Shown here one piece after another: positions 14,353 through 62,242 of a DNA stretch of 64,000 bases (within the stretch, counting starts at the first letter, position 1; each line of letters starts with the position of its first letter). Made by a program: the position numbers and the translations under genes. The stretch comes from Ranitomeya imitator (Eukaryota). The stretch lies in contig NW_027193546.1 in assembly GCF_032444005.1 (NCBI RefSeq), positions 744,001 through 808,000 on the forward strand, in the 5' to 3' direction. Under the pieces are notes generated by a model. The model made no database searches, was not told where the DNA came from, and was given only the letters and a program-made list of their open reading frames with translations.

Positions 14353-14946
14353 ACCCACATCTTCTAAGTGAGGGCTGCACCTGACTGCTAGGATCTGATT
14401 TCTCTGCTTTGGTGATGTCGCTGTAATGTTAGAACACTCATCGGTGCCAACGTTACGCTCCGAATACTGAATAGTCCCAAGGATATCCTGACGTGGAAAG
14501 ATTAAACGGCTTACCCGAAGCAGATCCCTCTACAGCTCTAATCAGGGGGGTGTTCAGGGCGGTTTCCAAATGTAGGTTAATATTCTGTCTAGACATTTAA
14601 TATCCTGTTCTTATTGGGCGCTGATTAGTAGATTTATGGGGGATATATATCCGCACTGGGCCGCAGTGATAATTTCCTGATCAGATCCGTGTACAGGGAA
14701 TGTGGCTGTAGGAGGCAGCTGGATAGATGGACGCCCTGTGTGTCATCACATAGGGTACGGCGACTCCTATGTGATGACCACGTCCTGGACACTAATGTTT
14801 CGGGTGGATGGCGCCTCTGAAGACTATTATAACCTCCTCAGAATAATGATGGGCTGTTTGAGGTCTGATAGCCACGGCTGCGCGTTTTGAGGTCCTGTCA
14901 TGTATTTATATATATCCGGTGTGTGCAGTGTATGGGGGGACACAGG

Positions 14947-17466
14947 TGTACTCTCTCTAGTTCCATTATATCCTTCCTGAGCACCGGTGCCCAAAACTGG
15001 ACACAGTACTCCATGTGCGGTCTAACTAGGGATTTGTACAGAGGCAGTATAATGCTCTCATCATGTGTATCCAGACCTCTTTTAATGCACCCCATGATCC
15101 TGTTTGCCTTGGCAGCTGCTGCCTGGCACTGGCTGCTCCAGGTAAGTTTATCATTAACTAGGATCCCCAAGTCCTTCTCCCTGTCAGATTTACCCAGTGG
15201 TTTCCCGTTCAGTGTGTAATGGTGATATTGATTCCCTCTTCCCATGTGTATAACCTTACATTTATCATTGTTAAACCTCATCTGCCACCTTTCAGCCCAA
15301 GTTTCCAACTTATCCAGATCCATCTGTAGCAGAATACTATCTTCTCTTGTATTAACTGCTTTACATAGTTTTGTATCATCTGCAAATATCGATATTTTAC
15401 TGTGTAAACCTTCTACCAGATCATTAATGAATATGTTGAAGAGAACAGGTCCCAATACTGACCCCTGCGGTACCCCACTGGTCACAGCGACCCAGTTAGA
15501 GACTATACCATTTATAACCACCCTCTGCTTTCTATCACTAAGCCAGTTACTAACCCATTTACACACATTTTCCCCCAGACCAAGCATTCTCATTTTGTGT
15601 ACCAACCTCTTGTGCGGCACGGTATCAAACGCTTTGGAAAAATCGAGATATACCACGTCCAATGACTCACCGTGGTCCAGTCTATAGCTTACCTCTTCAT
15701 AAAAACTGATTAGATTGGTTTGACAGGAGCGAGTTCTCATAAACCCATGCTGATATGGAGTTAAACAGTTATTCTCATTGAGATAATCCAGAATAACATC
15801 CCTCAGAAACCCTTCAAATATTTTACCAACAATAGAGGTTAGACTTACTGGCCTATAATTTCCAGGTTCACTTTTAGAGCCCTTTTTGAATATTGGCACC
15901 ACATTTGCTATGCGCCAGTCCTGCGGAACAGACCCTGTCGCTATAGAGTCACTAAAAATAAGAAATAATGGTTTATCTATTACATTACTTAGTTCTCTTA
16001 GTACTCGTGGGTGTATGCCATCCGGACCTGGAGATTTATCTATTTTAATCTTATTTAGCCGGTTTCGCACCTCTTCTTGGGTTAGATTGGTGACTCTTAA
16101 TATAGGGTTTTCATTGTTTCTTGGGATTTCACCTAGCATTTCATTTTCCACCGTGAATACCGTGGAGAAGAAGGTGTTTAATATGTTAGCTTTTTCCTCG
16201 TCATCTACAACCATTCTTTCCTCACTATTTTTTAAGGGGCCTACATTTTCAGTTTTTATTCTTTTACTATTGAACAGTTTGGGATTAGTTTTACTCTCCT
16301 TAGCAATGTGCTTCTCTGTTTCCTTTTTGGCAGCTTTAATTAGTTTTTTAGATAAAGTATTTTTCTCCCTATAGTTTTGTAGAGCTTCAATGGTGCCATC
16401 CTGCTTTAGTAGTGCAAATGCTTTCTTTTTACTGTTAATTGCCTGTCTTACTTCTTTGTTTAGCCACATTGGGTTTTTCCTATTTCTAGTCCTTTTATTC
16501 CCACAAGGTATAAACCGCTTACACTGCCTATTTAGGATGTTCTTAAACATTTCCCATTTATTATCTGTATTCTCATTTCTGAGGATATTGTCCCAGTCTA
16601 CCAGATTAAGGGCATCTCTAAGCTGTTCAAACTTTGCCTTCCTAAAGTTCAGTGTTTTTGTGACTCCCTGACAAGTCCCCCTAGTGAAAGACAGGTGAAA
16701 CTGCACAATATTGTGGTCGCTATTTCCTAAATGCCCAACCACCTGCAGATTTGTTATTCTGTCAGGTCTATTAGATAGTATTAGGTCTAAAAGTGCTGCT
16801 CCTCTGGTTGGATTCTGCACCAATTGTGAAAGATAATTTTTCTTGGTTATTAGCAGAAACCTGTTGCCTTTATGGGTTTCACAGGTTTCTGTTTCCCAGT
16901 TAATATCCGGGTAGTTAAAGTCCCCCATAACCAGGACCTCATTATGGGTTGCAGCTTCATCTATTTGCTTTAGAAGTAGACTTTCCATGGTTTCTGTTAT
17001 ATTTGGGGGTTTGTAACAGACCCCAATGAGAATTTTGTTACCATTTTTCCCTCCATGAATTTCGACCCATATGGACTCGACATCCTCATTCCCTTCGCTA
17101 ATATCCTCCCTTAAAGTGGACTTTAGACAAGACTTTACATAGAGACAAACCCCTCCTCCTCTCCGATTTTTACGATCCTTTCTAAACAGACTGTAACCCT
17201 GTAAGTTAACTGCCCAGTCATAGCTTTCATCTAACCATGTCTCGGTTATTCCCACTATGTCAAAGTTACCTGTAGATATTTCTGCTTCTAGTTCTTCCAT
17301 CTTGTTTGTCAGGCTTCTGGCGTTTGCGAGCATGCAGTTTAGAGGATTTTGTTTTGTTCCAATCTCCTCACTGTGGATTGTTTTAGAAATGTTCTTACCT
17401 CCCTTCTGAGTATGTTTTCCTGGGTCGTCTTTGTTCGAGTCTAATGTTTTTCTTCCCGTCCCCTCT
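14947..17466 (-). mobile_element. CR1-type LINE ORF2 (APE endonuclease + RT), lacking ORF1 and the 3' end
   Basis: ANARSL, ITETWL, MGDFN.PDI, LDLIL, SDHN endonuclease motifs; SGVPQGSVLGP and FADD RT motifs. Stops at ELERV and is joined to host sequence through a tgt microhomology. Confidence 0.93.
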
Positions 17467-17469
17467 TCT

Positions 17470-20400
17470 GGTGGTGGCACTGATCATACAGCTCTGCGGG
17501 GAGGAGGAGGTGGCTCTGATCATACAGCTCTGCGGGGAGGAGGAGGTGGCACTGATCATACAGCTCTGCGGGGAGGAGGTGGTGGCACTGATCATACAGC
17601 TCTGCGGGGAGGAGGTGGTGGCACTGATCATACAGCTCTGCGGGGAGGAGGTGGTGGCACTGATTATACAGCTCTGCGGGGAGAGGGTGGTGGCTCTGAT
17701 CATACAGCTCTGCGGGGAGGAGGTGGTGGCTCTGATCATACAGCTCTGCGGGGTGGAGGTGGTGGCACTGATTATACAGCTCTGCGGGGAGGAAGTGGTG
17801 GCTCTGATCATACAGCTCTGCGGGGGAGAAGGTGGTGGCACTGATCATACAGCTCTGCGGGGTGGAGGTGATTTCTCTGATCATACAGCTCTGCAGGGAG
17901 GAGTAGGTGGTGGCACTGATGATACAGCTCTGCGGGGAGGAGGTGGTGGCACTGATCATACAGCTCTGCGGGGTGGAGGTGATTTCTCTGATCATACAAC
18001 TCTGCGGGGAGGAGGAGGTGGCACTGATCATACAGCTCTGCAGGGAGGAGGTGTTGGCACTGATCATACAGCTCTGCGGGGAGGAGGTGGTGGCACTGTT
18101 CATACAGCTCTGCGGGGAGGAGGTGGTGGCACTGATTATACAGCTCTGCGGGGAGAGGGTGGTGGCTCTGATCATACAGCTCTGCGGGGAGGAGGTGGTG
18201 GCTCTGATCATACAGCTCTGCGGGGTGGAGGTGATTTCTCTGATCATACAGCTCTGCGGGGTGGAGGTGGTGGCACTGATTATACAGCTCTGCGGGGAGG
18301 AAGTGGTGGCTCTGATCATACAGCTCTGCGGGGGAGAAGGTGGTGGCACTGATCATACAGCTCTGCGGGGTGGAGGTGATTTCTCTGATCATACAGCTCT
18401 GCAGGGAGGAGTAGATGGTGGCACTGATGATACAGCTCTGCGGGGAGGAGGTGGTGGCACTGATCATACAGCTCTGCGGGGTGGAGGTGATTTATCTGAT
18501 CATACAGCTCTGCAGGGAGGAGTAGGTGGTGGCACTGATGATACAGCTCTGCGGGGAGGAGGTGGTGGCACTGATCATACAGCTCTGCGGGGAGGAGGTG
18601 GTGGCTCTGATCATACAGCTCTGCGGGGAGGAGGTGGTGGCTCTGATCATGCAGCTCTGCGGGGAGGAGGTGGTGGCACTGATCATACAGCTGTGCGGGG
18701 AGGAGGTGGTGGCACTGATCATACAGCTCTGCGGGGAGGAGGTGGTGGCTCTGATCATACAGCTCTGCGGGGAGGAGGTGGTGGTACTGATCATACAGCT
18801 GTGCGGGGAGGATGTGATTTCTCTGATCATACAGCTCTGCAGGGAGGAGGTGGTGGCTCTGATCATACAGCTCTGCGGGGAGGAGGAGGTGGCACTGATC
18901 ATACAGCTCTGCGGGGAGGAGGTGGTGGCACTGATCATACAGCTCTGCGGGGAGGAGGTGGTGGCACTGATCATACAGCTCTGCGGGGAGGAGGTGGTGG
19001 CACTGATCATACAGCTCTGCGGGGAGGAGGAGGTGGCACTGATCATACAGCTCTGCGGGGAGGAGGTGGTGGCACTGATCATACAGCTCTGCGGGGAGGA
19101 GGTGGTGGCACTGATCATACAGCTCTGCGGGGAGGAGGAGGTGGCACTGATCATACAGCTCTGCGGGGAGGAAGTGGTGGCACTGATCATACAGCTCTGC
19201 GGGGAGGAGGTGGTGGCACTGATCATACAGCTCTGCGGGGAGGAGGTGGTGGCACTGATCATACAGCTCTGCGGGGAGGAGGTGGTGGCACTGATCGTAC
19301 AGCTCTGCGGGGAGGAGGTGGTGGCACTGATCATACAGCTCTGCAGGGAGGAGGTGGTGGCACTGATCATACAGCTCTGCGGGGAGAAGGTGTTGGCACT
19401 GATCATACAGCTCTCCGGGGAGGAGGTGATTTCTCTGATCATACAGCTCTGCAGGGAGGAGGAGGTTATGGCTCTGATCATACAGGTCTGAGGGGAGTAG
19501 GTGGTGGCTCTGATCATACAGCTCTGCGGGGAGAGGGTGGTGGCACTGATCATACAGCTCTGCGGGGAGGAGGTGATGGCTCTGATCCTACAGCTCTGCG
19601 GGGAGAATGTGGTGGCTCTGATCATACAGCTCTGCGGGGAGAAGGTGGTGGCACTGATCATACGGCTCTCCGGGGAGGAGGTGATTTCTCTGATCACACA
19701 GCTCTGCAGGGAGGAGGTGGTGGCTCTGATCATACAGCTCTGCGGAGAGGAGGTGGTGGCTCTGATCATGCAGCTCTGCGGGGAGGAGGTGGTGGCACTG
19801 ATCATACAGCTCTGCAGGGAGGAGGTGGTGGTACTGATCATACAGCTCTGCGGGGAGGAGGTGGTGGCTCTGATCATACAGCTCTGCGGGGAGGAGGTGG
19901 TGGTACCGATCATACAGCTGTGCGGGGAGGAGGTGATTTCTCTGATCATACAGCTCTGCAGGGAGGAGGTGGTGTCTCTGATCATACAGCTCTGCGGGGA
20001 GGAGGTGGTGGCTCTGATCATACAGCTCTGCGGGGAGGAGGAGGTGGCACTGATCATACAGCTCTGCGGGGAGGAGGTGGTGGCACTGATCATACAGCTC
20101 TGCGGGGAGGAGGTGGTGGCACTGATCATACAGCTCTGCGGGGAGGAGGTGGTGGCACTGATCATACAGCTCTGCGGGGAGGAGGAGGTGGCTCTGATCA
20201 TACAGCTCTGCGGGGAGGAGGAGGTGGCACTGATCATACAGCTCTGCGGGGAGGAGGTGGTGGCACTGATCATACAGCTCTGCGGGGAGGAGGTGGTGGC
20301 ACTGATCATACAGCTCTGCGGGGAGGAGGTGGTGGCACTGATTATACAGCTCTGCGGGGAGAGGGTGGTGGCTCTGATCATACAGCTCTGCGGGGAGGAG

Positions 20401-21858
20401 GTGGTGGCTCTGATCATACAGCTCTGCGGGGTGGAGGTGATTTCTCTGATCATACAGCTCTGCGGGGTGGAGGTGGTGGCACTGATTATACAGCTCTGCG
20501 GGGAGGAAGTGGTGGCTCTGATCATACAGCTCTGCGGGGGAGAAGGTGGTGGCACTGATCATACAGCTCTGCGGGGTGGAGGTGATTTCTCTGATCATAC
20601 AGCTCTGCAGGGAGGAGAAGGTGGTGGCACTGATGATACAGCTCTGCGGGGAGGAGGTGGTGGCACTGATCATACAGCTCTGCGGGGTGGAGGTGATTTC
20701 TCTGATCATACAGCTCTGCAGGGAGGAGTAGGTGGTGGCACTGATGATACAGCTCTGCGGGGAGGAGGTGGTGGCACTGATCATACAGCTCTGCGGGGAG
20801 GAGGTGGTGGCTCTGATCATACAGCTCTGCGGGGAGGAGGTGGTGGCTCTGATCATGCAGCTCTGCGGGGAGGAGTTGGTGGCACTGATCATACAGCTGT
20901 GCGGGGAGGAGGTGGTGGCACTGATCATACAGCTCTGCGGGGAGGAGGTGGTGGCTCTGATCATACAGCTCTGCGGGGAGGAGGTGGTGGTACTGATCAT
21001 ACAGCTGTGCGGGGAGGAGGTGATTTCTCTGATCATACAGCTCTGCAGGGAAGAGGTGGTGGCTCTGATCATACAGCTCTGCGGGGAGGAGGAGGTGGCA
21101 CTGATCATACAGCTCTGCGGGGAGGAGGTGGTGGCACTGATCATACAGCTCTGCGGGGAGGAGGTGGTGGCACTGATCATACAGCTCTGCGGGGAGGAGG
21201 TGGTGGCACTGATCATACAGCTCTGCGGGGAGGAGGAGGTGGCACTGATCATACAGCTCTGCGGGGAGGAGGTGGTGGCACTGATCATACAGCTCTGCGG
21301 GGAGGAGGTGGTGGCACTGATCATACAGCTCTGCGGGGAGGAGGTGATTTCTCTGATCATACAGCTCTGCAGGGAGGAGGTGGTGGTACTGATCATACAG
21401 CTGTGCGGGGAGGAGGTGATTTCTCTGATCATACAGCTCTGCAGGGAGGAGGTGGTGGCACTGATCATACAGCTCTGCGGGGAGGAGGTGGTGGCACTGA
21501 TCATACAGCTCTGCGGGGAGGAGGTGGTGGCACTGATCATACAGCTCTGCGGGGAGGAGGTGGTGGCACTGATCATACAGCTCTGCGGGGAGGAGGTGAT
21601 TTCTCTGATCATACAGCTCTGCAGTGAGGAGGTGGTGGCTCTGATCATACATCTCTGCGGGGAGGAGGTGGTGGCTCTGATCATACAGCTCTGCGGGGAG
21701 GAGGAGGTGGCACTGATCATACAGCTCTGCGGGGAGGAGATGGTGGCTCTGATCATACAGCTCTGCGGGGAGGAGGTGGTGGCACTGATCATACAGCTCT
21801 GCGGGGAGGAGGTGGTGGCACTGATCATACAGCTCTGCGGGGAGGAGGTGGTGGCTCT
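17470..21858 (-). repeat. 36-bp minisatellite derived from the H1 3'-processing signal (about 120 units by length/36)
   Basis: Plus-strand unit ggcactgatcatacagctctgcggggaggaggtggt; contiguous with the H1 stem-loop. Confidence 0.97.
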
Positions 21859-21868
21859 TATAAGAGCC
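21853..21868 (-). terminator. Histone 3' stem-loop (H1)
   Basis: AAA-GGCTCTTATAAGAGCC-ACCAC on the minus strand, about 30 nt after the stop codon. Confidence 0.97.
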
Positions 21869-21896
21869 TTTGTGGTAACAGAACAGGGGCTGCAGC

Positions 21897-22532
21897 TTAT
21901 TTCTTAGCCGCGGGCTTCTTGGCTTTCGCAGCCTTCTTAGCCGGACTCTTGGCGGGTTTGGCCGCCTTCTTAGCCGGACTCTTCGTCACCTTCTTGGGCT
22001 TGGGAGCGGCTTTCGGCTTTTTGGGGCTCTTGGCCGCTTTCTTGGCCGCTGCGGGCTTCTTGGCCGTTTTCGGGCTCTTCTTGGCCGCAGTCGGAGCCTT
22101 CTTGGGCTTCTTCGGAGATTTGGCGGCTTTCTTGGCAGCAGCGGGTTTCTTAGGTTTGGCCGCAGCTGCTGGCTTCGTCTTGGCCACTTTGTCCTTCGTC
22201 TCCTGCTTCTTGTTCAGCTTGAAGGACCCGGAGGCGCCGCTGCCTTTCACCTGGAGGAGGGCGCCCTTGGTGACCAGAGCCTTGACGGCCAGCTTCAGGC
22301 GGCTGTTGTTCTTCTCTACATCGTATCCTCCAGCAGACAGAGCCTTCTTCAGGGCGGCCAGAGACACCCCGCTGCGCTCCTTGGAGGCGGACACGGCTTT
22401 CACGATCAGCTCGGAGACGCTGGGGCCGGAGGGTTTATTGCTCTTCTTGGCAGCAGATTTCTTCGGCTGCTTCTTGGATTTGGCGGCCGGTTCTGCGGGA
22501 GGGGGAGCGGCGGCTGGCGCGGTCTCTGCCAT
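21897..22532 (-). CDS. H1: Linker histone H1 (211 aa)
   Basis: MAETAPAAA; globular domain [47 protein letters not shown]; K/A/P-rich tail. CCAAT and GC boxes upstream. Confidence 0.98.
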
Positions 22533-23536
22533 CATATGCTGCTGACGCAAAATGAAAATATTTCCTGATAGGAAGGAAAACACTGAGGCCGGAGCTGGAG
22601 GCGCCTGTTATATGTACAGGCTTACTGCGCACTGATTGGCTGCTGAGCAGCACCGTCCTGAGCTTCTATTGGCTGACACTGGACACAGGCCCCGCCCCCT
22701 CCCAGCTGAGTCCGAGTGAAGCTCCGCTCTCCCCTTGTGCTTCCCTGCCCTGGATAAAAGCCCTTTACCGGCTAACACCGGACAGCAGAGCGCGATTCCT
22801 CCGTCGCCTCCCCTTCTCCAACATCTCCACCGGCCATTTGTAGCCGTCACTAGCAGAGATGCCGGGAAAGAGCGGAGAGGAAATCCCGGGATCATCGCCG
22901 CCGTCCTCCCGATCTGCACATCACTGTGTATCCGGGGAGATAAATCTGCTGCGGGAGCTCGTTCCTCCTATTCCCGGCTCCTGTCACCATCACAGGGATC
23001 TTTACTCCTATGTCTATCGCACAGGAAGCTGATTGTACGATGTGGGGACGAGCTGGAGCTGCTGACAACCCAGAAGGGTAACACAGGCGACGGCCTCCGC
23101 TGACTGCCACCTCCCTGACCTGTGGTGTCACTGTACCCCGTATGTGCAGAGGATTGGGGGGACACGTGTTCCACACCAGTAGATGATCCACATCGGTGGC
23201 TGATTGCAATCACCTGCCTGATATCGTGTCTTACCCAGTGTGAAGCTGTGACCGCTGCGGCATGTCATGGTGCGAAGAGCTCTGATGAGGCGACAGCTGC
23301 ACACTGCGACTCCCCAACCAAACACATAAACATCTCCGGGGAGAAAACTGAAATATTAATGGATTTATGTGACCCCCACTATTGTGTAAAAGGGGAATAT
23401 TGGGAGAAAAGCGGAGACACAAAATCCAGCGTCTACACAGAGAACACAGCTGTACATAGTATATATAGTGCACAACATCACATCTGCACAGCCCAGATCA
23501 GCAGTGTAATAAGTGTCACTGATACTAGAGGAGAGG

Positions 23537-23744
23537 GTACAGTATATACAGCAGAGTGTACAGTATATACAGCAGAGTACACAGTATATAGAGCAGAGTG
23601 TACAGTATATACAGCAGTGTGCACAGTATATAGAGCCAGTGTGTACAGTACATACAGCAGTGTGTACAGTATATAGAGCAGTGTGTAAAGTATATACAGC
23701 AGTGTGTACAATTTATAGACCAGAGTGTACAGTATATAGAGCAG
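23537..23744. repeat. 21-bp minisatellite (about 10 units) followed by a CT-rich tract to about 24122
   Basis: Unit gtacagtatatacagcagagt. Confidence 0.9.
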
Positions 23745-30901: not shown

Positions 30902-30904
30902 TCT

Positions 30905-33900
30905 GGTGGTGGCACTGATCATACAGCTCTGCGGGGAGGAGGAGGTGGCTCTGATCATACAGCTCTGCGGGGAGGAGGAGGTGGCACTGATCATACAGCT
31001 CTGCGGGGAGGAGGTGGTGGCACTGATCATACAGCTCTGCGGGGAGGAGGTGGTGGCACTGATCATACAGCTCTGCGGGGAGGAGGTGGTGGCACTGATT
31101 ATACAGCTCTGCGGGGAGAGGGTGGTGGCTCTGATCATACAGCTCTGCGGGGAGGAGGTGGTGGCTCTGATCATACAGCTCTGCGGGGTGGAGGTGGTGG
31201 CACTGATTATACAGCTCTGCGGGGAGGAAGTGGTGGCTCTGATCATACAGCTCTGCGGGGGAGAAGGTGGTGGCACTGATCATACAGCTCTGCGGGGTGG
31301 AGGTGATTTCTCTGATCATACAGCTCTGCAGGGAGGAGTAGGTGGTGGCACTGATGATACAGCTCTGCGGGGAGGAGGTGGTGGCACTGATCATACAGCT
31401 CTGCGGGGTGGAGGTGATTTCTCTGATCATACAACTCTGCGGGGAGGAGGAGGTGGCACTGATCATACAGCTCTGCGGGGAGGAGGTGTTGGCACTGATC
31501 ATACAGCTCTGCGGGGAGGAGGTGGTGGCACTGTTCATACAGCTCTGCGGGGAGGAGGTGGTGGCACTGATTATACAGCTCTGCGGGGAGAGGGTGGTGG
31601 CTCTGATCATACAGCTCTGCGGGGAGGAGGTGGTGGCTCTGATCATACAGCTCTGCGGGGTGGAGGTGATTTCTCTGATCATACAGCTCTGCGGGGTGGA
31701 GGTGGTGGCACTGATTATACAGCTCTGCGGGGAGGAAGTGGTGGCTCTGATCATACAGCTCTGCGGGGGAGAAGGTGGTGGCACTGATCATACAGCTCTG
31801 CGGGGTGGAGGTGATTTCTCTGATCATACAGCTCTGCAGGGAGGAGTAGATGGTGGCACTGATGATACAGCTCTGCGGGGAGGAGGTGGTGGCACTGATC
31901 ATACAGCTCTGCGGGGTGGAGGTGATTTATCTGATCATACAGCTCTGCAGGGAGGAGTAGGTGGTGGCACTGATGATACAGCTCTGCGGGGAGGAGGTGG
32001 TGGCACTGATCATACAGCTCTGCGGGGAGGAGGTGGTGGCTCTGATCATACAGCTCTGCGGGGAGGAGGTGGTGGCTCTGATCATGCAGCTCTGCGGGGA
32101 GGAGGTGGTGGCACTGATCATACAGCTGTGCGGGGAGGAGGTGGTGGCACTGATCATACAGCTCTGCGGGGAGGAGGTGGTGGCTCTGATCATACAGCTC
32201 TGCGGGGAGGAGGTGATGGTACTGATCATACAGCAGTGCGGGGAGGATGTGATTTCTCTGATCATACAGCTCTGCAGGGAGGAGGTGGTGGCTCTGATCA
32301 TACAGCTCTGCGGGGAGGAGGAGGTGGCACTGATCATACAGCTCTGCGGGGAGGAGGTGGTGGCACTGATCATACAGCTCTGCGGGGAGGAGGTGGTGGC
32401 ACTGATCATACAGCTCTGCGGGGAGGAGGTGGTGGCACTGATCATACAGCTCTGCGGGGAGGAGGAGGTGGCACTGATCATACAGCTCTGCGGGGAGGAG
32501 GTGGTGGCACTGATCATACAGCTCTGCGGGGAGGAGGTGGTGGCACTGATCATACAGCTCTGCGGGGAGGAGGAGGTGGCACTGATCATACAGCTCTGCG
32601 GGGAGGAAGTGGTGGCACTGATCATACAGCTCTGCGGGGAGGAGGTGGTGGCACTGATCATACAGCTCTGCGGGGAGGAGGTGCTGGCACTGATCATACA
32701 GCTCTGCGGGGAGGAGGTGGTGGCACTGATCGTACAGCTCTGCGGGGAGGAGGTGGTGGCACTGATCATACAGCTCTGCAGGGAGGAGGTGGTGGCACTG
32801 ATCATACAGCTCTGCGGGGAGAAGGTGTTGGCACTGATCATACAGCTCTCCGGGGAGGAGGTGATTTCTCTGATCATACAGCTCTGCAGGGAGGAGGAGG
32901 TTATGGCTCTGATCATACAGGTCTGAGGGGAGTAGGTGGTGGCTCTGATCATACAGCTCTGCGGGGAGAGGGTGGTGGCACTGATCATACAGCTCTGCGG
33001 GGAGGAGGTGATGGCTCTGATCCTACAGCTCTGCGGGGAGAATGTGGTGGCTCTGATCATACAGCTCTGCGGGGAGAAGGTGGTGGCACTGATCATACGG
33101 CTCTCCGGGGAGGAGGTGATTTCTCTGATCACACAGCTCTGCAGGGAGGAGGTGGTGGCTCTGATCATACAGCTCTGCGGAGAGGAGGTGGTGGCTCTGA
33201 TCATGCAGCTCTGCGGGGAGGAGGTGGTGGCACTGATCATACAGCTCTGCAGGGAGGAGGTGGTGGTACTGATCATACAGCTCTGCGGGGAGGAGGTGGT
33301 GGCTCTGATCATACAGCTCTGCGGGGAGGAGGTGGTGGTACCGATCATACAGCTGTGCGGGGAGGAGGTGATTTCTCTGATCATACAGCTCTGCAGGGAG
33401 GAGGTGGTGTCTCTGATCATACAGCTCTGCGGGGAGGAGGTGGTGGCTCTGATCATACAGCTCTGCGGGGAGGAGGAGGTGGCACTGATCATACAGCTCT
33501 GCGGGGAGGAGGTGGTGGCACTGATCATACAGCTCTGCGGGGAGGAGGTGGTGGCACTGATCATACAGCTCTGCGGGGAGGAGGTGGTGGCACTGATCAT
33601 ACAGCTCTGCGGGGAGGAGGAGGTGGCTCTGATCATACAGCTCTGCGGGGAGGAGGAGGTGGCACTGATCATACAGCTCTGCGGGGAGGAGGTGGTGGCA
33701 CTGATCATACAGCTCTGCGGGGAGGAGGTGGTGGCACTGATCATACAGCTCTGCGGGGAGGAGGTGGTGGCACTGATTATACAGCTCTGCGGGGAGAGGG
33801 TGGTGGCTCTGATCATACAGCTCTGCGGGGAGGAGGTGGTGGCTCTGATCATACAGCTCTGCGGGGTGGAGGTGATTTCTCTGATCATACAGCTCTGCGG

Positions 33901-36416
33901 GGTGGAGGTGGTGGCACTGATTATACAGCTCTGCGGGGAGGAAGTGGTGGCTCTGATCATACAGCTATGCGGGGGAGAAGGTGGTGGCACTGATCATACA
34001 GCTCTGCGGGGTGGAGGTGATTTCTCTGATCATACAGCTCTGCAGGGAGGAGAAGGTGGTGGCACTGATGATACAGCTCTGCGGGGAGGAGGTGGTGGCA
34101 CTGATCATACAGCTCTGCGGGGTGGAGGTGATTTCTCTGATCATACAGCTCTGCAGGGAGGAGTAGGTGGTGGCACTGATGATACAGCTCTGCGGGGAGG
34201 AGGTGGTGGCACTGATCATACAGCTCTGCGGGGAGGAGGTGGTGTCTCTGATCATACAGCTCTGCGGGGAGGAGGTGGTGGCTCTGATCATACAGCTCTG
34301 CGGGGAGGAGGAGGTGGCACTGATCATACAGCTCTACGGGGAGGAGGTGGTGGCACTGATCATACAGCTCTGCGGGGAGGAGGTGGTGGCACTGATCATA
34401 CAGCTCTGCGGGGAGGAGGTGGTGGCACTGATCATACAGCTCTGCGGGGAGGAGGAGGTGGCTCTGATCATACAGCTCTGCGGGGAGGAGGTGATTTCTC
34501 TGATCATACAGCTCTGCAGGGAGGAGGTGGTGTCTCTGATCATACAGCTCTGCGGGGAGGAGGTGGTGGCTCTGATCATACAGCTCTGCGGGGAGGAGGA
34601 GGTGGCACTGATCATACAGCTCTGCGGGGAGGAGGTGGTGGCACTGATCATACAGCTCTGCGGGGAGGAGGTGGTGGCACTGATCATACAGCTCTGCGGG
34701 GAGGAGGTGGTGGCACTGATCATACAGCTCTGCGGGGAGGAGGAGGTGGCTCTGATCATACAGCTCTGCGGGGAGGAGGAGGTGGCACTGATCATACAGC
34801 TCTGCGGGGAGGAGGTGGTGGCACTGATCATACAGCTCTGCGGGGAGGAGGTGGTGGCACTGATCATACAGCTCTGCGGGGAGGAGGTGGTGGCACTGAT
34901 TATACAGCTCTGCGGGGAGAGGGTGGTGGCTCTGATCATACAGCTCTGCGGGGAGGAGGTGGTGGCTCTGATCATACAGCTCTGCGGGGTGGAGGTGATT
35001 TCTCTGATCATACAGCTCTGCGGGGTGGAGGTGGTGGCACTGATTATACAGCTCTGCGGGGAGGAAGTGGTGGCTCTGATCATACAGCTATGCGGGGGAG
35101 AAGGTGGTGGCACTGATCATACAGCTCTGCGGGGTGGAGGTGATTTCTCTGATCATACAGCTCTGCAGGGAGGAGAAGGTGGTGGCACTGATGATACAGC
35201 TCTGCGGGGAGGAGGTGGTGGCACTGATCATACAGCTCTGCGGGGTGGAGGTGATTTCTCTGATCATACAGCTCTGCAGGGAGGAGTAGGTGGTGGCACT
35301 GATGATACAGCTCTGCGGGGAGGAGGTGGTGGCACTGATCATACAGCTCTGCGGGGAGGAGGTGGTGGCTCTGATCATACAGCTCTGCGGGGAGGAGGTG
35401 GTGGCTCTGATCATGCAGCTCTGCGGGGAGGAGTTGGTGGCACTGATCATACAGCTGTGCGGGGAGGAGGTGGTGGCACTGATCATACAGCTCTGCGGGG
35501 AGGAGGTGGTGGCTCTGATCATACAGCTCTGCGGGGAGGAGGTGGTGGTACTGATCATACAGCTGTGCGGGGAGGAGGTGATTTCTCTGATCATACAGCT
35601 CTGCAGGGAAGAGGTGGTGGCTCTGATCATACAGCTCTGCGGGGAGGAGGAGGTGGCACTGATCATACAGCTCTGCGGGGAGGAGGTGGTGGCACTGATC
35701 ATACAGCTCTGCGGGGAGGAGGTGGTGGCACTGATCATACAGCTCTGCGGGGAGGAGGTGGTGGCACTGATCATACAGCTCTGCGGGGAGGAGGAGGTGG
35801 CACTGATCATACAGCTCTGCGGGGAGGAGGTGGTGGCACTGATCATACAGCTCTGCGGGGAGGAGGTGGTGGCACTGATCATACAGCTCTGCGGGGAGGA
35901 GGTGATTTCTCTGATCATACAGCTCTGCAGGGAGGAGGTGGTGGTACTGATCATACAGCTGTGCGGGGAGGAGGTGATTTCTCTGATCATACAGCTCTGC
36001 AGGGAGGAGGTGGTGGCACTGATCATACAGCTCTGCGGGGAGGAGGTGGTGGCACTGATCATACAGCTCTGCGGGGAGGAGGTGGTGGCACTGATCATAC
36101 AGCTCTGCGGGGAGGAGGTGGTGGCACTGATCATACAGCTCTGCGGGGAGGAGGTGATTTCTCTGATCATACAGCTCTGCAGTGAGGAGGTGGTGGCTCT
36201 GATCATACATCTCTGCGGGGAGGAGGTGGTGGCTCTGATCATACAGCTCTGCGGGGAGGAGGAGGTGGCACTGATCATACAGCTCTGCGGGGAGGAGATG
36301 GTGGCTCTGATCATACAGCTCTGCGGGGAGGAGGTGGTGGCACTGATCATACAGCTCTGCGGGGAGGAGGTGGTGGCACTGATCATACAGCTCTGCGGGG
36401 AGGAGGTGGTGGCTCT
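30905..36416 (-). repeat. 36-bp H1-processing-signal minisatellite (about 150 units by length/36)
   Basis: Same unit; contiguous with the stem-loop at 36411-36426. Confidence 0.97.
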
Positions 36417-36454
36417 TATAAGAGCCTTTGTGGTAACAGAACAGGGGCTGCAGC

Positions 36455-37090
36455 TTATTTCTTAGCCGCGGGCTTCTTGGCTTTCGCAGCCTTCTTAGCC
36501 GGACTCTTGGCGGGTTTGGCCGCCTTCTTAGCCGGACTCTTCGTCACCTTCTTGGGCTTGGGAGCGGCTTTCGGCTTCTTGGGGCTCTTGGCCGCTTTCT
36601 TGGCCGCTGCGGGCTTCTTGGCCGTTTTCGGGCTCTTCTTGGCCGCAGTCGGAGCCTTCTTGGGCTTCTTCGGAGATTTGGCGGCTTTCTTGGCAGCAGC
36701 GGGTTTCTTAGGTTTGGCCGCAGCTGCTGGCTTCGTCTTGGCCACTTTGTCCTTCGTCTCCTGCTTCTTGTTCAGCTTGAAGGACCCGGAGGCGCCGCTG
36801 CCTTTCACCTGGAGGAGGGCGCCCTTGGTGACCAGAGCCTTGACGGCCAGCTTCAGGCGGCTGTTGTTCTTCTCTACATCGTATCCTCCAGCAGACAGAG
36901 CCTTCTTCAGGGCGGCCAGAGACACCCCGCTGCGCTCCTTGGAGGCGGACACGGCTTTCACGATCAGCTCGGAGACGCTGGGGCCGGAGGGTTTATTGCT
37001 CTTCTTGGCAGCAGATTTCTTCGGCTGCTTCTTGGATTTGGCGGCCGGTTCTGCGGGAGGGGGAGCGGCGGCTGGCGCGGTCTCTGCCAT
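36455..37090 (-). CDS. H1: Linker histone H1 (211 aa)
   Basis: Same protein as 21897-22532; stem-loop at 36411-36426. Confidence 0.98.
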
Positions 37091-38094
37091 CATATGCTGC
37101 TGACGCAAAATGAAAATATTTCCTGATAGGAAGGAAAACACTGAGGCCGGAGCTGGAGGCGCCTGTTATATGTACAGGCTTACTGCGCACTGATTGGCTG
37201 CTGAGCAGCACCGTCCTGAGCTTCTATTGGCTGACACTGGACACAGGCCCCGCCCCCTCCCAGCTGAGTCCGAGTGAAGCTCCGCTCTCCCCTTGTGCTT
37301 CCCTGCCCTGGATAAAAGCCCTTTACCGGCTAACACCGGACAGCAGAGCGCGATTCCTCCGTCGCCTCCCCTTCTCCAACATCTCCACCGGCCATTTGTA
37401 GCCGTCACTAGCAGAGATGCCGGGAAAGAGCGGAGAGGAAATCCCGGGATCATCGCCGCCGTCCTCCCGATCTGCACATCACTGTGTATCCGGGGAGATA
37501 AATCTGCTGCGGGAGCTCGTTCCTCCTATTCCCGGCTCCTGTCACCATCACAGGGATCTTTACTCCTATGTCTATCGCACAGGAAGCTGATTGTACGATG
37601 TGGGGACGAGCTGGAGCTGCTGACAACCCAGAAGGGTAACACAGGCGACGGCCTCCGCTGACTGCCACCTCCCTGACCTGTGGTGTCACTGTACCCCGTA
37701 TGTGCAGAGGATTGGGGGGACACGTGTTCCACACCAGTAGATGATCCACATCGGTGGCTGATTGCAATCACCTGCCTGATATCGTGTCTTACCCAGTGTG
37801 AAGCTGTGACCGCTGCGGCATGTCATGGTGCGAAGAGCTCTGATGAGGCGACAGCTGCACACTGCGACTCCCCAACCAAACACATAAACATCTCCGGGGA
37901 GAAAACTGAAATATTAATGGATTTATGTGACCCCCACTATTGTGTAAAAGGGGAATATTGGGAGAAAAGCGGAGACACAAAATCCAGCGTCTACACAGAG
38001 AACACAGCTGTACATAGTATATATAGTGCACAACATCACATCTGCACAGCCCAGATCAGCAGTGTAATAAGTGTCACTGATACTAGAGGAGAGG

Positions 38095-38302
38095 GTACAG
38101 TATATACAGCAGAGTGTACAGTATATACAGCAGAGTACACAGTATATAGAGCAGAGTGTACAGGATATACAGCAGTGTGCACAGTATATAGAGCCAGTGT
38201 GTACAGTACATACAGCAGTGTGTACAGTATATAGAGCAGTGTGTAAAGTATATACAGCAGTGTGTACAATTTATAGACCAGAGTGTACAGTATATAGAGC
38301 AG
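38095..38302. repeat. 21-bp minisatellite followed by a CT-rich tract
   Basis: Copy of 23537-23744. Confidence 0.9.
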
Positions 38303-44023: not shown

Positions 44024-44039
44024 GGCTCTTAGAAGAGCC
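44024..44039 (-). terminator. Histone 3' stem-loop (H2A)
   Basis: GGCTCTTCTAAGAGCC-ACCCA, HDE-like ACAAGAGCC. Confidence 0.96.
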
Positions 44040-44068
44040 TTTGGTTTTGTAGAGATTGGCGGCAGCGC

Positions 44069-55310: not shown

Positions 55311-58300
55311 ACTGATCATACAGCTCTGCGGGGAGGAGGTGGTGGCACTGATCATACAGCTCTGCGGGGGAGAAGGTGGTGGCACTGATCATACAGCTCT
55401 GCGGGGTGGAGGTGATTTCTCTGATCATACAGCTCTGCAGGGAGGAGTAGGTGGTGGCACTGATGATACAGCTCTGCGGGGAGGAGGTGGTGGCACTGAT
55501 CATACAGCTCTGCGGGGAGGAGGAGGTGGCACTGATCATACAGCTCTGCGGGGAGGAGGTGGTGGCACTGATCATACAGCTCTGCGGGGAGGAGGTGGTG
55601 GCACTGATCATACAGCTCTGCGGGGAGGAGGTGGTGGCACTGATCGTACAGCTCTGCGGGGAGGAGGTGGTGGCACTGATCATACAGCTCTGCAGGGAGG
55701 AGGTGGTGGCACTGATCATACAGCTCTGCGGGGAGAAGGTGTTGGCACTGATCATACAGCTCTCCGGGGAGGAGGTGATTTCTCTGATCATACAGCTCTG
55801 CAGGGAGGAGGAGGTTATGGCTCTGATCATACAGGTCTGAGGGGAGTAGGTGGTGGCTCTGATCATACAGCTCTGCGGGGAGAGGGTGGTGGCACTGATC
55901 ATACAGCTCTGCGGGGAGGAGGTGATGGCTCTGATCCTACAGCTCTGCGGGGAGAATGTGGTGGCTCTGATCATACAGCTCTGCAGGGAGGAGGTGGTGG
56001 CACTGATCATACAGCTCTGCGGGGAGGAGGTGGTGGCACTGATCATACAGCTCTGCGGGGAGGAGGTGGTGGCACTGATCATACAGCTCTGCGGGGAGGA
56101 GGTGGTGGCACTGATCATACAGCTCTGCGGGGAGGAGGTGGTGGCTCTGATCATACAGCTCTGCGGGGAGGAGGTGGTGGCTCTGATCATACAGCTCTGC
56201 GGGGAGGAGGTGGTGGTACTGATCATACAGCTGTGCGGGGAGGAGGTGATTTCTCTGATCATACAGCTCTGCAGGGAGGAGGTGGTGGCTCTGATCATAC
56301 AGCTCTGCGGGGAGGAGGTGGTGGCTCTGATCATACAGCTCTGCGGGGAGGAGGAGGTGGCACTGATCATACAGCTCTGCGGGGAGGAGGTGGTGGCACT
56401 GATCATACAGCTCTGCGGGGAGGAGGTGGTGGCACTGATCATACAGCTCTGCGGGGAGGAGGTGGTGGCACTGATCATACAGCTCTGCGGGGAGGAGGAG
56501 CTGGCTCTGATCATACAGCTCTGCGGGGTGGAGGTGATTTCTCTGATCATACAGCTCTGCGGGGAGGAGGAGGTGGCACTGATCATACAGCTCTGCGGGG
56601 AGGAGGTGGTGGCACTGATCATACAGCTCTGCGGGGAGGAGGTGGTGGCTCTGATCATGCTGCTCTGCGGGGAGGAGGTGGTGGTACTGATCATACAGCT
56701 GTGCGGGGAGGAGGTGATTTCTCTGATCATACAGCTCTGCAGGGAGGAGGTGGTGGCTCTGATCATACAGCTCTGCGGGGAGGAGGTGGTGGCACTGATC
56801 ATACAGCTCTGCGGGGAGGAGGTGGTGGCACTGATCATACAGCTCTGCGGGGAGGAGGTGGTGGCACTGATTATACAGCTCTGCGGGGAGAGGGTGGTGG
56901 CTCTGATCATACAGCTCTGCGGGGAGGAGGTGGTGGCTCTGATCATACAGCTCTGCGGGGTGGAGGTGATTTCTCTGATCATACAGCTCTGCGGGGTGGA
57001 GGTGGTGGCACTGATTATACAGCTCTGCGGGGAGGAAGTGGTGGCTCTGATCATACAGCTCTGCGGGGGAGAAGGTGGTGGCACTGATCATACAGCTCTG
57101 CGGGGTGGAGGTGATTTCTCTGATCATACAGCTCTGCAGGGAGGAGTAGGTGGTGGCACTGATGATACAGCTCTGCGGGGAGGAGGTGGTGGCACTGATC
57201 ATACAGCTCTGCGGGGTGGAGGTGATTTCTCTGATCATACAGCTCTGCGGGGAGGAGGAGGTGGCACTGATCATACAGCTCTGCGGGGAGGAGGTGGTGG
57301 CACTGATCATACAGCTCTGCGGGGAGGAGGTGGTGGCACTGATCATACAGCTCTGCGGGGAGGAGGTGGTGGCACTGATTATACAGCTCTGCGGGGAGAG
57401 GGTGGTGGCTCTGGTCATACAGCTCTGCGGGGAGGAGGTGGTGGCTCTGATCATACAGCTCTGCGGGGTGGAGGTGATTTCTCTGATCATACAGCTCTGC
57501 GGGGTGGAGGTGGTGGCACTGATTATACAGCTCTGCGGGGAGGAAGTGGTGGCTCTGATCATACAGCTCTGCGGGGGAGAAGGTGGTGGCACTGATCATA
57601 CAGCTCTGCGGGGTGGAGGTGGTGGCACTGATCATACAGCTCTGCGGGGAGGAGGTGATTTCTCTGATCATACAGCTCTGCAGGGAGGAGTAGGTGGTGG
57701 CACTGATGATACAGCTCTGCGGGGAGGAGGTGGTGGCACTGATCATACAGCTCTGCGGGGTGGAGGTGATTTCTCTGATCATACAGCTCTGCAGGGAGGA
57801 GTAGGTGGTGGCACTGATGATACAGCTCTGCGGGGAGGAGGTGGTGGCACTGATCATACAGCTCTGCGGGGAGGAGGTGGTGGCACTGATCATACAGCTC
57901 TGCGGGGAGGAGGAGGTGGCACTGATCATACAGCTCTGCGGGGAGGAGGTGGTGGCACTGATCATACAGCTGTGCGGGGAGGAGGTGATTTCTCTGATCA
58001 TACAGCTCTGCAGGGAGGAGGTGGTGGCACTGATCATACAGCTCTGCGGGGAGGAGGTGGTGGCACTGATCATACAGCTCTGCGGGGAGGAGGTGGTGGC
58101 ACTGATCATACAGCTCTGCGGGGAGGAGGTGGTGGCACTGATCATACAGCTCTGCGGGGACGAGGTGGTGGCACTGATCGTACAGCTCTGCGGGGAGGAG
58201 GTGGTGGCACTGATCATACAGCTCTGCAGGGAGGAGGTGGTGGCACTGATCATACAGCTCTGCGGGGAGAAGGTGTTGGCACTGATCATACAGCTCTCCG

Positions 58301-61300: not shown

Positions 61301-61601
61301 AGGTGGTGGCACTGATCATACAGCTCTGCGGGGAGGAGGTGGTGGCACTGATCATACAGCTCTGCGGGGAGGAGGTGGTGGCTCTGATCATACAGCTCTG
61401 CGGGGAGGAGGAGGTGGCACTGATCATACAGCTCTGCGGGGAGGAGGTGGTGGCACTGATGATACAGCTCTGCGGGGAGGAAGTGGTGGCACTGATCATA
61501 CAGCTCTGCGGGGAGGAGGTGGTGGCACTGATCATACAGCTCTGCGGGGAGGAGGTGGTGGCACTGATCATACAGCTCTGCGGGGAGGAGGTGGTGGCTC
61601 T
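55311..61601 (-). repeat. 36-bp H1-processing-signal minisatellite (about 175 units by length/36)
   Basis: Same unit; contiguous with the H1 stem-loop at 61596-61611; ends about 400 bp upstream of the H3 ATG. Confidence 0.97.
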
Positions 61602-61639: not shown

Positions 61640-62242
61640 TTATTTCTTAGCCGCGGGCTTCTTGGCTTTCGCAGCCTTCTTAGCCGGACTCTTCGTCACC
61701 TTCTTGGGCTTGGGAGCGGCTTTCGGCTTCTTGGGGCTCTTGGCCGCTTTCTTGGCCGCTGCGGGCTTCTTGGCCTTTTTCGGGCTCTTCTTGGCCGCAG
61801 TCGGAGCCTTCTTGGGCTTCTTCGGAGATTTGGCGGCTTTCTTGGCAGCAGCGGGTTTCTTAGGTTTGGCCGCAGCTGCTGGCTTCGTCTTGGCCACTTT
61901 GTCCTTCGTCTCCTGCTTCTTGTTCAGCTTGAAGGACCCGGAGGCGCCGCTGCCTTTCACCTGGAGGAGGGCGCCCTTGGTGACCAGAGCCTTGACGGCC
62001 AGCTTCAGGCGGCTGTTGTTCTTCTCTACATCGTATCCTCCAGCAGACAGAGCCTTCTTCAGGGCGGCCAGAGACACCCCGCTGCGCTCCTTGGAGGCGG
62101 ACACGGCTTTCACGATCAGCTCGGAGACGCTGGGGCCGGAGGGTTTATTGCTCTTCTTGGCAGCAGATTTCTTCGGCTGCTTCTTGGATTTGGCGGCCGG
62201 TTCTGCGGGAGGGGGAGCGGCGGCTGGCGCGGTCTCTGCCAT
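61640..62242 (-). CDS. H1: Linker histone H1 (200 aa, short-tail version)
   Basis: Same as the other H1 copies but lacks 11 aa ([11 protein letters not shown]) and has a T-to-K change; stem-loop at 61596-61611. Confidence 0.98.

What the first reader, a model, noticed from the sequence alone, without database searches (positions are those of the whole stretch)
17470..21868. Minisatellite built from the H1 3'-processing signal: hundreds of tandem U7 snRNA binding sites, each with a correctly spaced cleavage site
Seen: on the H1 sense strand the gene ends AAA-GGCTCTTATAAGAGCC-ACCAC-CTCCTCCCCGC-AGAGCTGTA-TGATC-AGTGCC-ACCAC-CTCC... The 36-bp unit is therefore hairpin 3' arm (AGAGCC or AGTGCC, 6) + ACCAC (5) + spacer (11) + AGAGCTGTA (9) + TGATC (5), and unit 1 is H1's own signal. 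The same array follows all three H1 genes (17470-21858, 30905-36416, 55311-61601; about 450 units by length/36). Established: replication-dependent histone pre-mRNAs are cut about 5 nt after the hairpin, at a distance measured from the HDE paired to U7. The vertebrate U7 5' guide, as I recall it, contains UACAGCUCU, the exact complement of AGAGCUGUA, and strong HDEs can support SLBP-independent cleavage in vitro. Inference: H1 read-through RNA would carry one SLBP hairpin plus over 100 HDE/cleavage cassettes. It could act as a reiterated U7-directed cleavage/termination array giving 36-nt-phased products, or as a multivalent U7 snRNP sponge or histone-locus-body scaffold (amphibian oocyte lampbrush loops read through histone genes into flanking satellite). 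I know of no described satellite of this origin, but could not search.
Basis: partly seen in the sequence, partly recalled or inferred. Interest (0 to 1): 0.95.

Follow-up and report, generated by a model that had tools for sequence, protein, structure and literature searches.

The report
Minisatellite grown from histone H1 cutting signal
Behind each of three frog histone H1 genes, the 36-base signal that tells the cell where to cut the H1 messenger RNA has been copied head-to-tail 121 to 174 times; the origin is clear and unusual, but the extra copies look like a tolerated by-product, not a proven device.

Summary
Three 36-bp tandem arrays (121, 152 and 174 units, 447 in all, a quarter of the window) start inside the 3' arm of the H1 stem-loop. 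Unit 1 is H1's own processing signal: 3' arm, ACCAC, 11-nt spacer, AGAGCTGTA, TGATC.

AGAGCUGUA is the exact complement of UACAGCUCU in the human and mouse U7 5' ends printed in PMC7026596. The predicted duplex is 9 bp at -14.0 kcal/mol, within the range of the other histone downstream elements in this window. The frog's own U7 could not be obtained.

The functional reading is not supported by what could be tested:
- The 9-mer is no better protected than the rest of the unit when independent mutation events are counted (12 of 66, p = 0.13; 12 of 36 windows are as low).
- Units with a broken 9-mer have themselves been amplified.
- Array length varies freely and grows by block duplication.
- A bare 9-bp element without a hairpin is a weak U7 substrate by published in vitro data.

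One RNA-like run holds a contig that crosses the cleavage site into unit 2, so uncleaved or read-through RNA probably exists.

The scan flagged the same array at other places in this genome, and also an H2B-signal array. Verdict: real, of unusual origin, most likely near-neutral.

The parts
21897..22535 (-). Histone H1 coding sequence, copy 1
   Evidence: ORF; Pfam Linker_histone PF00538, E = 1e-22; sequence read
21853..21868 (-). H1 3' stem-loop (GGCTCT / TATA / AGAGCC), copy 1. Its 3' arm (21853-21858) is the first 6 nt of array unit 1
   Evidence: Rfam RF00032 at 29.9 bits, E = 1e-6, below the gathering score of 34; the hairpin forms in the RNA fold
17470..21858 (-). 36-bp array A1: 121 full units plus a partial one. 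Unit = 3' arm remnant (AGAGCC, AGTGCC or AGAGAA) + ACCAC + 11-nt C-rich spacer + AGAGCTGTA (U7-complementary core) + TGATC
   Evidence: Tandem Repeats Finder; segmentation; unit types
21823..21858 (-). Unit 1 of A1, which is H1's own cleavage site and downstream element (AGAGCTGTA at 21828-21836)
   Evidence: duplex with mouse U7 5' region of 9 bp, -14.0 kcal/mol
36455..37093 (-). Histone H1 coding sequence, copy 2 (identical protein to copy 1)
30905..36416 (-). 36-bp array A2: 152 units. Same as A1 apart from a 31-unit internal block duplication; stem-loop at 36411-36426
61640..62245 (-). Histone H1 coding sequence, copy 3 (11 residues shorter in the C-terminal tail)
55311..61601 (-). 36-bp array A3: 174 units, stem-loop at 61596-61611. 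It shares higher-order blocks with A1 and A2 but in a different arrangement. Its far end abuts the H3 promoter region
14898..17480 (-). LINE ORF (endonuclease + reverse transcriptase, 860 aa) joined directly to the far end of A1, on the same strand as H1. A second copy lies at 28333-30915 behind A2; there is none behind A3
   Evidence: Pfam RVT_1 5e-34 and Exo_endo_phos 3e-16; junction read

Best explanation
This is a lineage-specific minisatellite born from a tandem duplication of a 36-bp segment of the H1 gene's 3' end. The segment runs from the 3' arm of the stem-loop, through the cleavage site and the U7-complementary downstream element, to 5 nt beyond it. The array then grew and shrank by unequal exchange or slippage of single units and multi-unit blocks. 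It spread to all H1 copies with the concerted evolution of the tandem histone cluster. Only unit 1, the one preceded by a complete hairpin, serves as H1's processing signal. The other units are carried along as near-neutral DNA. As a by-product, any polymerase that runs past the first site makes RNA with a U7-complementary 9-mer every 36 nt. That RNA can probably bind U7 snRNP weakly and be degraded, but nothing indicates the copies are kept for that purpose. Shown: anatomy, origin, block-wise growth, and absence of element-specific constraint. Inferred: the neutrality and the fate of read-through RNA.
For: - Origin: unit 1 is the gene's own signal, and the array boundary lies inside the stem's 3' arm behind all three genes.
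- Homology: the unit aligns in register with the other histone 3' flanks of the window (21 of 36 with H3).
- U7 match: 9 contiguous pairs with the mammalian U7 5' region at -14.0 kcal/mol, reached by 0.2% of shuffles. The other downstream elements here give -6.6 to -14.7.
- No element-specific constraint: inferred independent events are 12 of 66 in the 9-nt core against 25% expected (p = 0.13). Events per site are 1.33 in the core, against 1.40 in the functionless TGATC tail and 1.50 in the arm remnant. Twelve of 36 circular 9-nt windows are as low, and low-frequency alleles per site are as frequent in the core as elsewhere.
- Broken units persist: 13 unit types (46 of the 416 units that are 36 nt long) with an altered 9-mer, one of them amplified to 15 copies.
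- Ordinary minisatellite dynamics: 60 unit types in repeated higher-order blocks. A1 and A2 differ by one 31-unit duplication, and copy number is 121, 152 and 174.
- RNA structure: the array RNA folds no better than shuffles (z = 0.02).
- Recurrence: unchecked scan notes report the same array with 26 to about 800 units elsewhere in this genome, plus a separate H2B-signal array. The H2B gene here already carries a 2-copy seed of that kind.
Against: - The arrays sit behind every H1 gene seen, and 89% of units keep the exact 9-mer. By raw frequency the core is the best-kept segment (0.987 against 0.87-0.98). With only 66 inferred events, the test has little power to detect moderate constraint.
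- Two different histone 3' signals expanding in one genome could also mean selection for extra U7 sites, not only a repeat-prone locus.
- One RNA-like run (X8) has a 205-nt contig running from the H1 coding region across the cleavage site into unit 2. That run has no coverage of the H1 promoter, which has the same copy number. So uncleaved or read-through RNA probably exists and could have an effect.
- The species' own U7 sequence was not examined.
Confidence: 0.6

Rival explanations
1. Selected fail-safe processing and termination array. Polymerases that miss the first site meet further U7 sites every 36 nt. U7 snRNP binds one, CPSF73 cuts at the ruler distance upstream, and the downstream RNA is degraded 5' to 3'. 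Transcription therefore ends before it reaches the neighbouring LINE or histone gene, and the extended H1 RNA is trimmed back to the SLBP-protected hairpin.
For: - Each unit keeps an A-containing ACCAC at the same distance from the 9-mer as in unit 1.
- 90% of units give a predicted U7 duplex of -12 kcal/mol or better.
- There is no hairpin in the array RNA to hide the sites.
- A contig in run X8 shows that RNA does cross the first cleavage site.
- PMC7026596 documents U7-guided cleavage of hairpin-less substrates and 5' to 3' degradation of the downstream product.
Against: - Internal units lack the hairpin and hence SLBP.
- The duplex is only 9 bp. In PMC7026596 SLBP-independent cleavage needed a 16-bp duplex, and a 9-bp substrate gave below 5% product.
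- A fail-safe needs a few copies, not 121 to 800.
- There is no excess constraint on the 9-mer or on ACCAC (only 71% intact).
Confidence: 0.17
2. Multivalent U7 snRNP sponge or histone-locus-body scaffold. Read-through array RNA, for example on oocyte lampbrush loops, concentrates U7 snRNP at the locus or buffers its free level.
For: - There are hundreds of U7-complementary 9-mers per transcript.
- Amphibian oocytes show read-through into satellites, and U7-containing bodies sit at histone loci (PMC12046345; PMC2114352).
- Array k-mers are present in RNA-like runs X8 and X4 at depths like that of H1.
Against: - Array k-mers are two to three orders of magnitude more abundant than H1 in genomic DNA (run X1). 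Traces of DNA could therefore explain them in RNA libraries, and run X7 has H1 but no array.
- Contigs give no strand or level.
- There is no element-specific constraint.
- Array size varies about 30-fold between loci according to the scan notes, which is odd for a dosed buffer.
Confidence: 0.08
3. DNA-level role or cause. The G-rich complementary strand carries GGGGAGGAGGTGGTGG once per unit, a two-tetrad quadruplex-type motif on the template strand of H1 transcription. It could act as a polymerase pause or boundary element, or simply make the locus unstable and drive the expansion.
For: - One G2-run motif is found per unit.
- Most inferred mutations and all the length variants (37- and 39-nt units) fall in the C-rich spacer.
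- From memory, and as a lead only, GGAGGTGG resembles the classical hypervariable minisatellite core.
Against: No structural or binding data exist. Two-tetrad quadruplexes are weak. As a cause of instability, this fits within the best explanation instead of competing with it.
Confidence: 0.1

Closest known systems
Newt (Notophthalmus) histone clusters embedded in satellite DNA, with read-through transcription on lampbrush loops
   Same: An amphibian histone cluster flanked by kilobases of tandem repeat downstream of histone genes. Read-through from histone promoters into satellite is the classical observation (cited in PMC13525598, PMC2114352 and PMC12046345).
   Different: From my own knowledge, the newt satellite has a unit of a few hundred bp and is not described as derived from a processing signal. 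Here the unit is 36 bp and is itself the H1 cleavage site plus U7-complementary element. Read-through is not demonstrated here beyond one contig.
Canonical replication-dependent histone 3' processing signal (stem-loop, ACCCA, downstream element paired to U7)
   Same: Unit 1 has all three parts in the normal order. Its spacing is within 1-2 nt of the mouse H2a substrate printed in PMC7026596.
   Different: Units 2 to n have only the 3' arm of the hairpin, so they have no SLBP site. The element pairs over 9 bp only, and the loop is UAUA.
GC-rich hypervariable minisatellites
   Same: A 36-bp unit with strand-asymmetric G/C content, interspersed variant units, block duplications and copy number that differs between paralogous loci.
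   Different: The founding unit is a recognisable functional RNA-processing signal, and the array is fixed behind every member of a gene family.
Repeat-derived RNAs that sequester RNA-binding factors (for example short-tandem-repeat lncRNAs)
   Same: A transcript of this array would carry hundreds of identical short binding motifs.
   Different: No evidence here for an abundant transcript, for binding or for sequestration. This is an analogy from general knowledge only.
H2B 3'-signal arrays in the same genome (scan notes s1-271769, s1-279616)
   Same: The same kind of event: a hairpin 3' arm plus cleavage site plus downstream element, reiterated behind a histone gene. The H2B gene in this window has two copies of AAGAGCCACCCACAC 24 nt apart.
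   Different: A different gene, unit and period. Those arrays lie outside this window and I did not inspect them.

Membership tests
Histone 3' processing signal (stem-loop + downstream element) | 6-bp stem and 4-nt loop hairpin with an A-rich 5' flank | tested here: met
   Unit 1 only: AAA-GGCTCT-TATA-AGAGCC, with U at loop positions 1 and 3. RF00032 gives 29.9 bits, E = 1e-6, below the gathering score of 34. Internal units have only the 3' arm.
Histone 3' processing signal (stem-loop + downstream element) | ACCCA-type cleavage site 4-5 nt after the stem | tested here: met
   ACCAC follows the arm in unit 1 and in 319 of 447 units. The actual cut site was not determined.
Histone 3' processing signal (stem-loop + downstream element) | Downstream element complementary to the U7 snRNA 5' end, about 10-15 nt past the cut | tested here: inconclusive
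   AGAGCUGUA forms 9 perfect pairs with the human and mouse U7 printed in PMC7026596, at -14.0 kcal/mol, 11 nt after ACCAC. The species' own U7 was not available. The H4 and H1 elements both extend GAGC with a downstream GCUG, which fits a U7 containing CAGCUC.
Histone 3' processing signal (stem-loop + downstream element) | U7- and SLBP-dependent cleavage | not testable with these tools
   Needs extract or in vivo assays.
Minisatellite | Head-to-tail array of a 10-100 bp unit, tens to hundreds of copies | tested here: met
   36-bp period, 121-174 copies, 90-91% matches.
Minisatellite | Variant units interspersed; growth by unequal exchange; copy number differs between loci | tested here: met
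   60 unit types, recurring multi-unit blocks, and a 31-unit block that separates A1 from A2.
Transcribed amphibian histone-cluster satellite (newt type) | Read-through transcription from the histone gene into the repeat | tested here: inconclusive
   Run X8: a 205-nt contig at 21815-22019 crosses the cleavage site, with no promoter coverage in that run. Run X7: H1 contig only. These are contigs, so there is no strand or level, and the runs' RNA status is itself a guess.
Multivalent RNA sponge or scaffold | Abundant transcript that binds and sequesters its factor | not testable with these tools
   No binding or abundance data.
Selected cis-element array | The functional motif is better protected from mutation than its flanks | tested here: not met
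   12 of 66 inferred events fall in the 9-nt core (p = 0.13). 12 of 36 windows are as low. The tail and arm remnant have the same rate.

The most novel reading that the evidence does not exclude
The array is a natural, selected multi-site U7 device. Read-through H1 RNA carrying hundreds of U7-complementary sites either gives repeated backup cleavage and termination with 36-nt phased products, or concentrates U7 snRNP at the histone locus. This would be a satellite recruited from an RNA-processing signal to serve that same processing pathway. The parallel H2B-signal arrays in the same genome would then be a second instance.
Probability: 0.15. Interest if true: 0.85.

Novelty: new variant of a known kind. 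Interest (0 to 1): 0.45.

Why it matters
Satellites whose founding unit is a recognisable RNA-processing signal are unusual. I found no description of one made from the histone cleavage site and U7 element.

If the arrays are neutral, they show that the 3' ends of highly transcribed histone genes can seed kilobase repeats, and that a genome tolerates thousands of decoy U7 sites next to the real ones. That in itself limits how readily U7 snRNP is titrated.

If they are used, they offer a natural system for open questions in histone mRNA biogenesis: how cleavage is coupled to termination, how much a downstream element can do without SLBP, and what nucleates the histone locus body.

The arrays also matter practically. 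They fill a quarter of this window, they generate spurious ORFs of up to 1701 codons, and they will confuse gene callers and assemblers.

Tried and rejected
- **Species' own U7:** Rfam at gathering thresholds found six histone stem-loops in the window and no U7. The scan's notes list no U7 gene. Two older Xenopus U7 papers were not held, and the U7 survey (PMC5054213) gives the frog sequence only in a figure. I therefore used the human and mouse U7 from PMC7026596 as a proxy.
- **Frequency-based conservation:** The 9-mer looks best kept by raw frequency (0.987). I rejected this as evidence because the units are not independent; a few old variants were amplified in blocks. Event counts remove the signal.
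- **Array RNA structure:** No more stable than shuffles. The Rfam low-threshold hits inside the array (ar14 and others) are far below their cut-offs and are driven by the CCUCCUCCC run.
- **Pre-existing satellite capturing the H1 gene:** Rejected, because the unit matches the stem arm, the ACC flank and the spacer of other histone genes in register.
- **Assembly artefact:** Rejected, because the DNA run X1 holds array words at a summed depth of about 1e5, against about 200 for H1. Exact array lengths remain as good as the assembly.
- **Coding potential of the long array ORFs:** Rejected. They are periodic open frames of a stop-free 36-bp (12-codon) unit.
- **Cross-species presence:** Runs of organisms B to E hold parts of the H1 region, but the single read-laying run was already spent, so it is unknown whether they carry the array.
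- **The far flank of A3** has no second copy in the window.
Full report
**1. What is there**

The window is part of a tandemly repeated histone cluster. It holds:
- H4 genes at 13995, 27430 and 42015 (+) and at 51522 (-).
- H2A at 44069-44461 (-).
- H2B around 48440-49048 (-), with a masked N run that I left alone.
- H3 at 54497-54907 (-).
- Three H1 genes on the minus strand at 21897-22535, 36455-37093 and 61640-62245 (Pfam).

Tandem Repeats Finder finds a 36-bp array immediately 3' of each H1 gene: 17470-21855, 30905-36413 and 55311-61598. They have 121, 152 and 174 copies at 90-91% matches. My segmentation gives 447 full units of 60 sequence types. Together the arrays fill about a quarter of the window.

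**2. Anatomy**

Read on the H1 sense strand, each gene ends with a 28-nt 3' UTR followed by the hairpin GGCTCT-TATA-AGAGCC, then ACCAC, CTCCTCCCCGC, AGAGCTGTA and TGATC. Next comes AGTGCC-ACCAC-..., and so on.

The repeat therefore begins inside the 3' arm of the hairpin, and unit 1 is the gene's own processing signal. The hairpin matches Rfam RF00032 at 29.9 bits (E = 1e-6), under the gathering score of 34 because of the UAUA loop and the ACCAC flank. It forms in the predicted fold. The internal units carry AGTGCC (252 units), AGAGCC (107) or AGAGAA (58) in place of the arm, and have no 5' arm, so they cannot bind SLBP.

**3. Origin**

The other histone genes of the window have the same layout: arm, ACCCA or ACCAA, a spacer, then a GAGC-containing element. 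The H1 unit aligns in register with them, at 21 of 36 positions with the H3 flank, including the spacer core TCCTCCC.

A satellite of unrelated origin would not be expected to match the arm, the flank and the spacer in register. The array was therefore made from the H1 signal, not the reverse.

The three arrays share multi-unit blocks. A1 and A2 differ by one 31-unit internal duplication, and A3 has the same blocks in other numbers and orders. So the array predates the divergence of the cluster's repeat types, and it grows by unequal exchange of blocks.

**4. Is AGAGCTGTA a U7 site?**

PMC7026596 prints the human and mouse U7 snRNAs; both contain GUGUUACAGCUCUUUUAG. AGAGCUGUA is the exact complement of UACAGCUCU.

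| Target | Predicted duplex with mouse U7 5' region |
|---|---|
| H1 unit | 9 contiguous pairs, -14.0 kcal/mol (0.2% of shuffled units do as well) |
| H2B | -14.7 kcal/mol |
| H4 | -13.2 kcal/mol |
| H2A | -11.8 kcal/mol |
| H3 | -6.6 kcal/mol |
| Mouse H2a-type element | -16.9 kcal/mol |

Ninety per cent of the array units reach -12 kcal/mol or better. The element sits 11 nt after ACCAC, within 1-2 nt of the spacing in the mouse H2a substrate.

The frog's own U7 could not be obtained. The survey PMC5054213 states only that UCUUU is universally conserved in the histone-binding region.

**5. Is the element kept by selection?**

By raw frequency the 9-mer is the best-conserved segment:

| Segment | Mean consensus frequency | Inferred events per site |
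|---|---|---|
| Arm remnant (1-6) | 0.87 | 1.50 |
| ACCAC (7-11) | 0.94 | 2.40 |
| Spacer (12-22) | 0.965 | 2.36 |
| 9-mer core (23-31) | 0.987 | 1.33 |
| TGATC tail (32-36) | 0.977 | 1.40 |

The units are not independent, however. A few old variants, such as the AGAGAA-ATCAC type, were amplified in blocks. I therefore linked each unit type to its nearest more frequent type and counted the changes as events.

- The 9-nt core holds 12 of 66 events against 25% expected (p = 0.13).
- The whole 3' half of the unit is equally quiet. Twelve of 36 circular 9-nt windows have as few events.
- The functionless tail and arm remnant have the same rate as the core, and low-frequency alleles are as common in the core as elsewhere.
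- Thirteen types with an altered 9-mer persist (46 of the 416 units that are 36 nt long), one of them at 15 copies.
- The excess of events lies in the C-rich part, where the 37- and 39-nt length variants also arise.

The test has modest power, so moderate constraint is not excluded.

**6. Could internal units be cut?**

Published in vitro work bears on this (PMC7026596). SLBP-independent processing was seen with an improved element that forms a 16-bp duplex. A substrate left with 9 uninterrupted pairs, admittedly lacking the purine core, gave under 5% product. Hairpin-less RNAs were cut or degraded efficiently only with a U7 matched over 15 pairs.

The internal units here offer 9 pairs and no hairpin. 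I infer that they are weak substrates. U7 may bind transiently, especially at the high local concentration of a histone locus body, but efficient phased cleavage is not expected.

**7. RNA evidence**

The public runs that hold the H1 region are stored as contigs, and their RNA or DNA status is a guess.
- **X1 (DNA):** array words reach a summed depth of about 1e5, against about 200 for H1. The arrays are therefore real and very abundant.
- **X8 (RNA-like):** a 205-nt contig (21815-22019, no mismatches) runs from the H1 coding region through the hairpin and the cleavage site into unit 2. The H1 promoter, which has the same copy number as that junction, has zero coverage in this run. Molecules uncut at the H1 site are therefore more likely RNA than contaminating DNA.
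- **X7 (RNA-like):** the H1 contig stops at 21912, and no array words are seen.
- **X4:** holds array words but also promoter sequence, so it may contain DNA.

Contigs give no strand, ends or level, and array-only words could come from traces of DNA. The fair statement is that some uncleaved or read-through H1 RNA probably exists. That is expected for any histone gene.

**8. Context**

The scan's own unchecked notes report the same 36-bp array behind H1 genes on other pieces of this genome, from 26 to about 800 units. They also report arrays made from the H2B 3' signal (82 copies; 38 kb or more). Another agent read the H2B case as a tolerated by-product in a poison-frog histone cluster.

In this window the H2B gene already has two copies of AAGAGCCACCCACAC 24 nt apart. 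The hairpin arm and the downstream element resemble each other (AAGAGCC in both), which gives a built-in direct repeat. Recurrence at two genes points either to a repeat-prone kind of site or to a shared advantage. I cannot separate the two here.

The G-rich complementary strand carries GGGGAGGAGGTGGTGG once per unit. That is a plausible source of instability.

**9. Comparison with what is known**

The nearest precedent is the newt histone cluster embedded in satellite DNA with read-through on lampbrush loops (cited). That satellite is not described as derived from a processing signal.

A 2026 survey of histone gene organisation in over 250 species contains neither 'satellite' nor 'HDE'. Searches combining U7 snRNP, satellite DNA, minisatellite, histone H1, frog and poison frog found no description. 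The library covers open-access papers only, so absence is not proof.

**10. Verdict**

I place the functional readings as follows:

| Reading | Probability |
|---|---|
| Fail-safe cleavage and termination | about 0.17 |
| U7 sponge or scaffold | about 0.08 |
| DNA-level role | about 0.1 |
| Near-neutral minisatellite | about 0.6 |

It is a new variant of a known kind: a minisatellite in an amphibian histone cluster, distinguished by its founding unit. Interest is moderate, 0.45. It would rise sharply if stranded RNA or U7-binding data showed that the copies are used.

Noticed in passing
window 48590-48628 (-): The H2B 3' end carries two copies of AAGAGCCACCCACAC 24 nt apart: the hairpin 3' arm plus cleavage site, then the downstream element with the same 15 nt. 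H2A (about 43990-44040, -) shares only AAGAGCC at that spacing. This looks like the two-copy seed of the H2B-signal arrays that scan notes report elsewhere in the genome.
   Followed up: partly
window 14898-17480 and 28333-30915 (-): An 860-aa LINE ORF (endonuclease + reverse transcriptase, Pfam) is joined directly to the far end of arrays A1 and A2, on the same strand as H1. Read-through from H1 would run into it in sense. It is absent behind A3, whose far end abuts the H3 promoter region.
   Followed up: partly
window 17395-21907, 30830-36465, 55201-62255 (both strands): The stop-free 36-bp (12-codon) unit yields open frames of up to 1701 codons in several frames. One of them runs antisense through the H1 gene. 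These are periodic artefacts that gene callers may report as proteins.
   Followed up: yes
window 23532-24122, 38090-38682, 63242-63826: About 1 kb upstream of each H1 gene lie ten copies of a 21-bp repeat (AGAGTGTACAGTATATACAGC), followed by about 370 bp of imperfect (CT)n. Further CT-rich tracts lie at 12036-12157, 25309-25592 and 39869-40178. Their function is unknown. GA/CT repeats matter for histone locus body formation in Drosophila (from memory), which may be worth a look.
   Followed up: no
window 61640-62245 vs 21897-22535 (-): H1 copy 3 lacks 11 residues of the lysine-rich C-terminal tail present in copies 1 and 2, and differs at one nearby residue. Copies 1 and 2 encode identical proteins.
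   Followed up: no
window 12472-13164, 24435-24752, 25907-26599, 38995-39312, 40493-41185 (+): ORFs of 105 and 117 aa recur in every cluster repeat and have no Pfam hit. Another scan note calls this a BRAT1 C-terminal fragment carried in each histone repeat; I did not test that.
   Followed up: no
window 48663-48947: A run of 285 N lies inside the H2B coding region.
   Followed up: no
window 22558 (-): In run X7 the H1 contig ends at 22558 and continues into Illumina adapter sequence. This is consistent with an mRNA 5' end about 23 nt upstream of the ATG and about 30 nt downstream of the TATA-like CATATAA.
   Followed up: no
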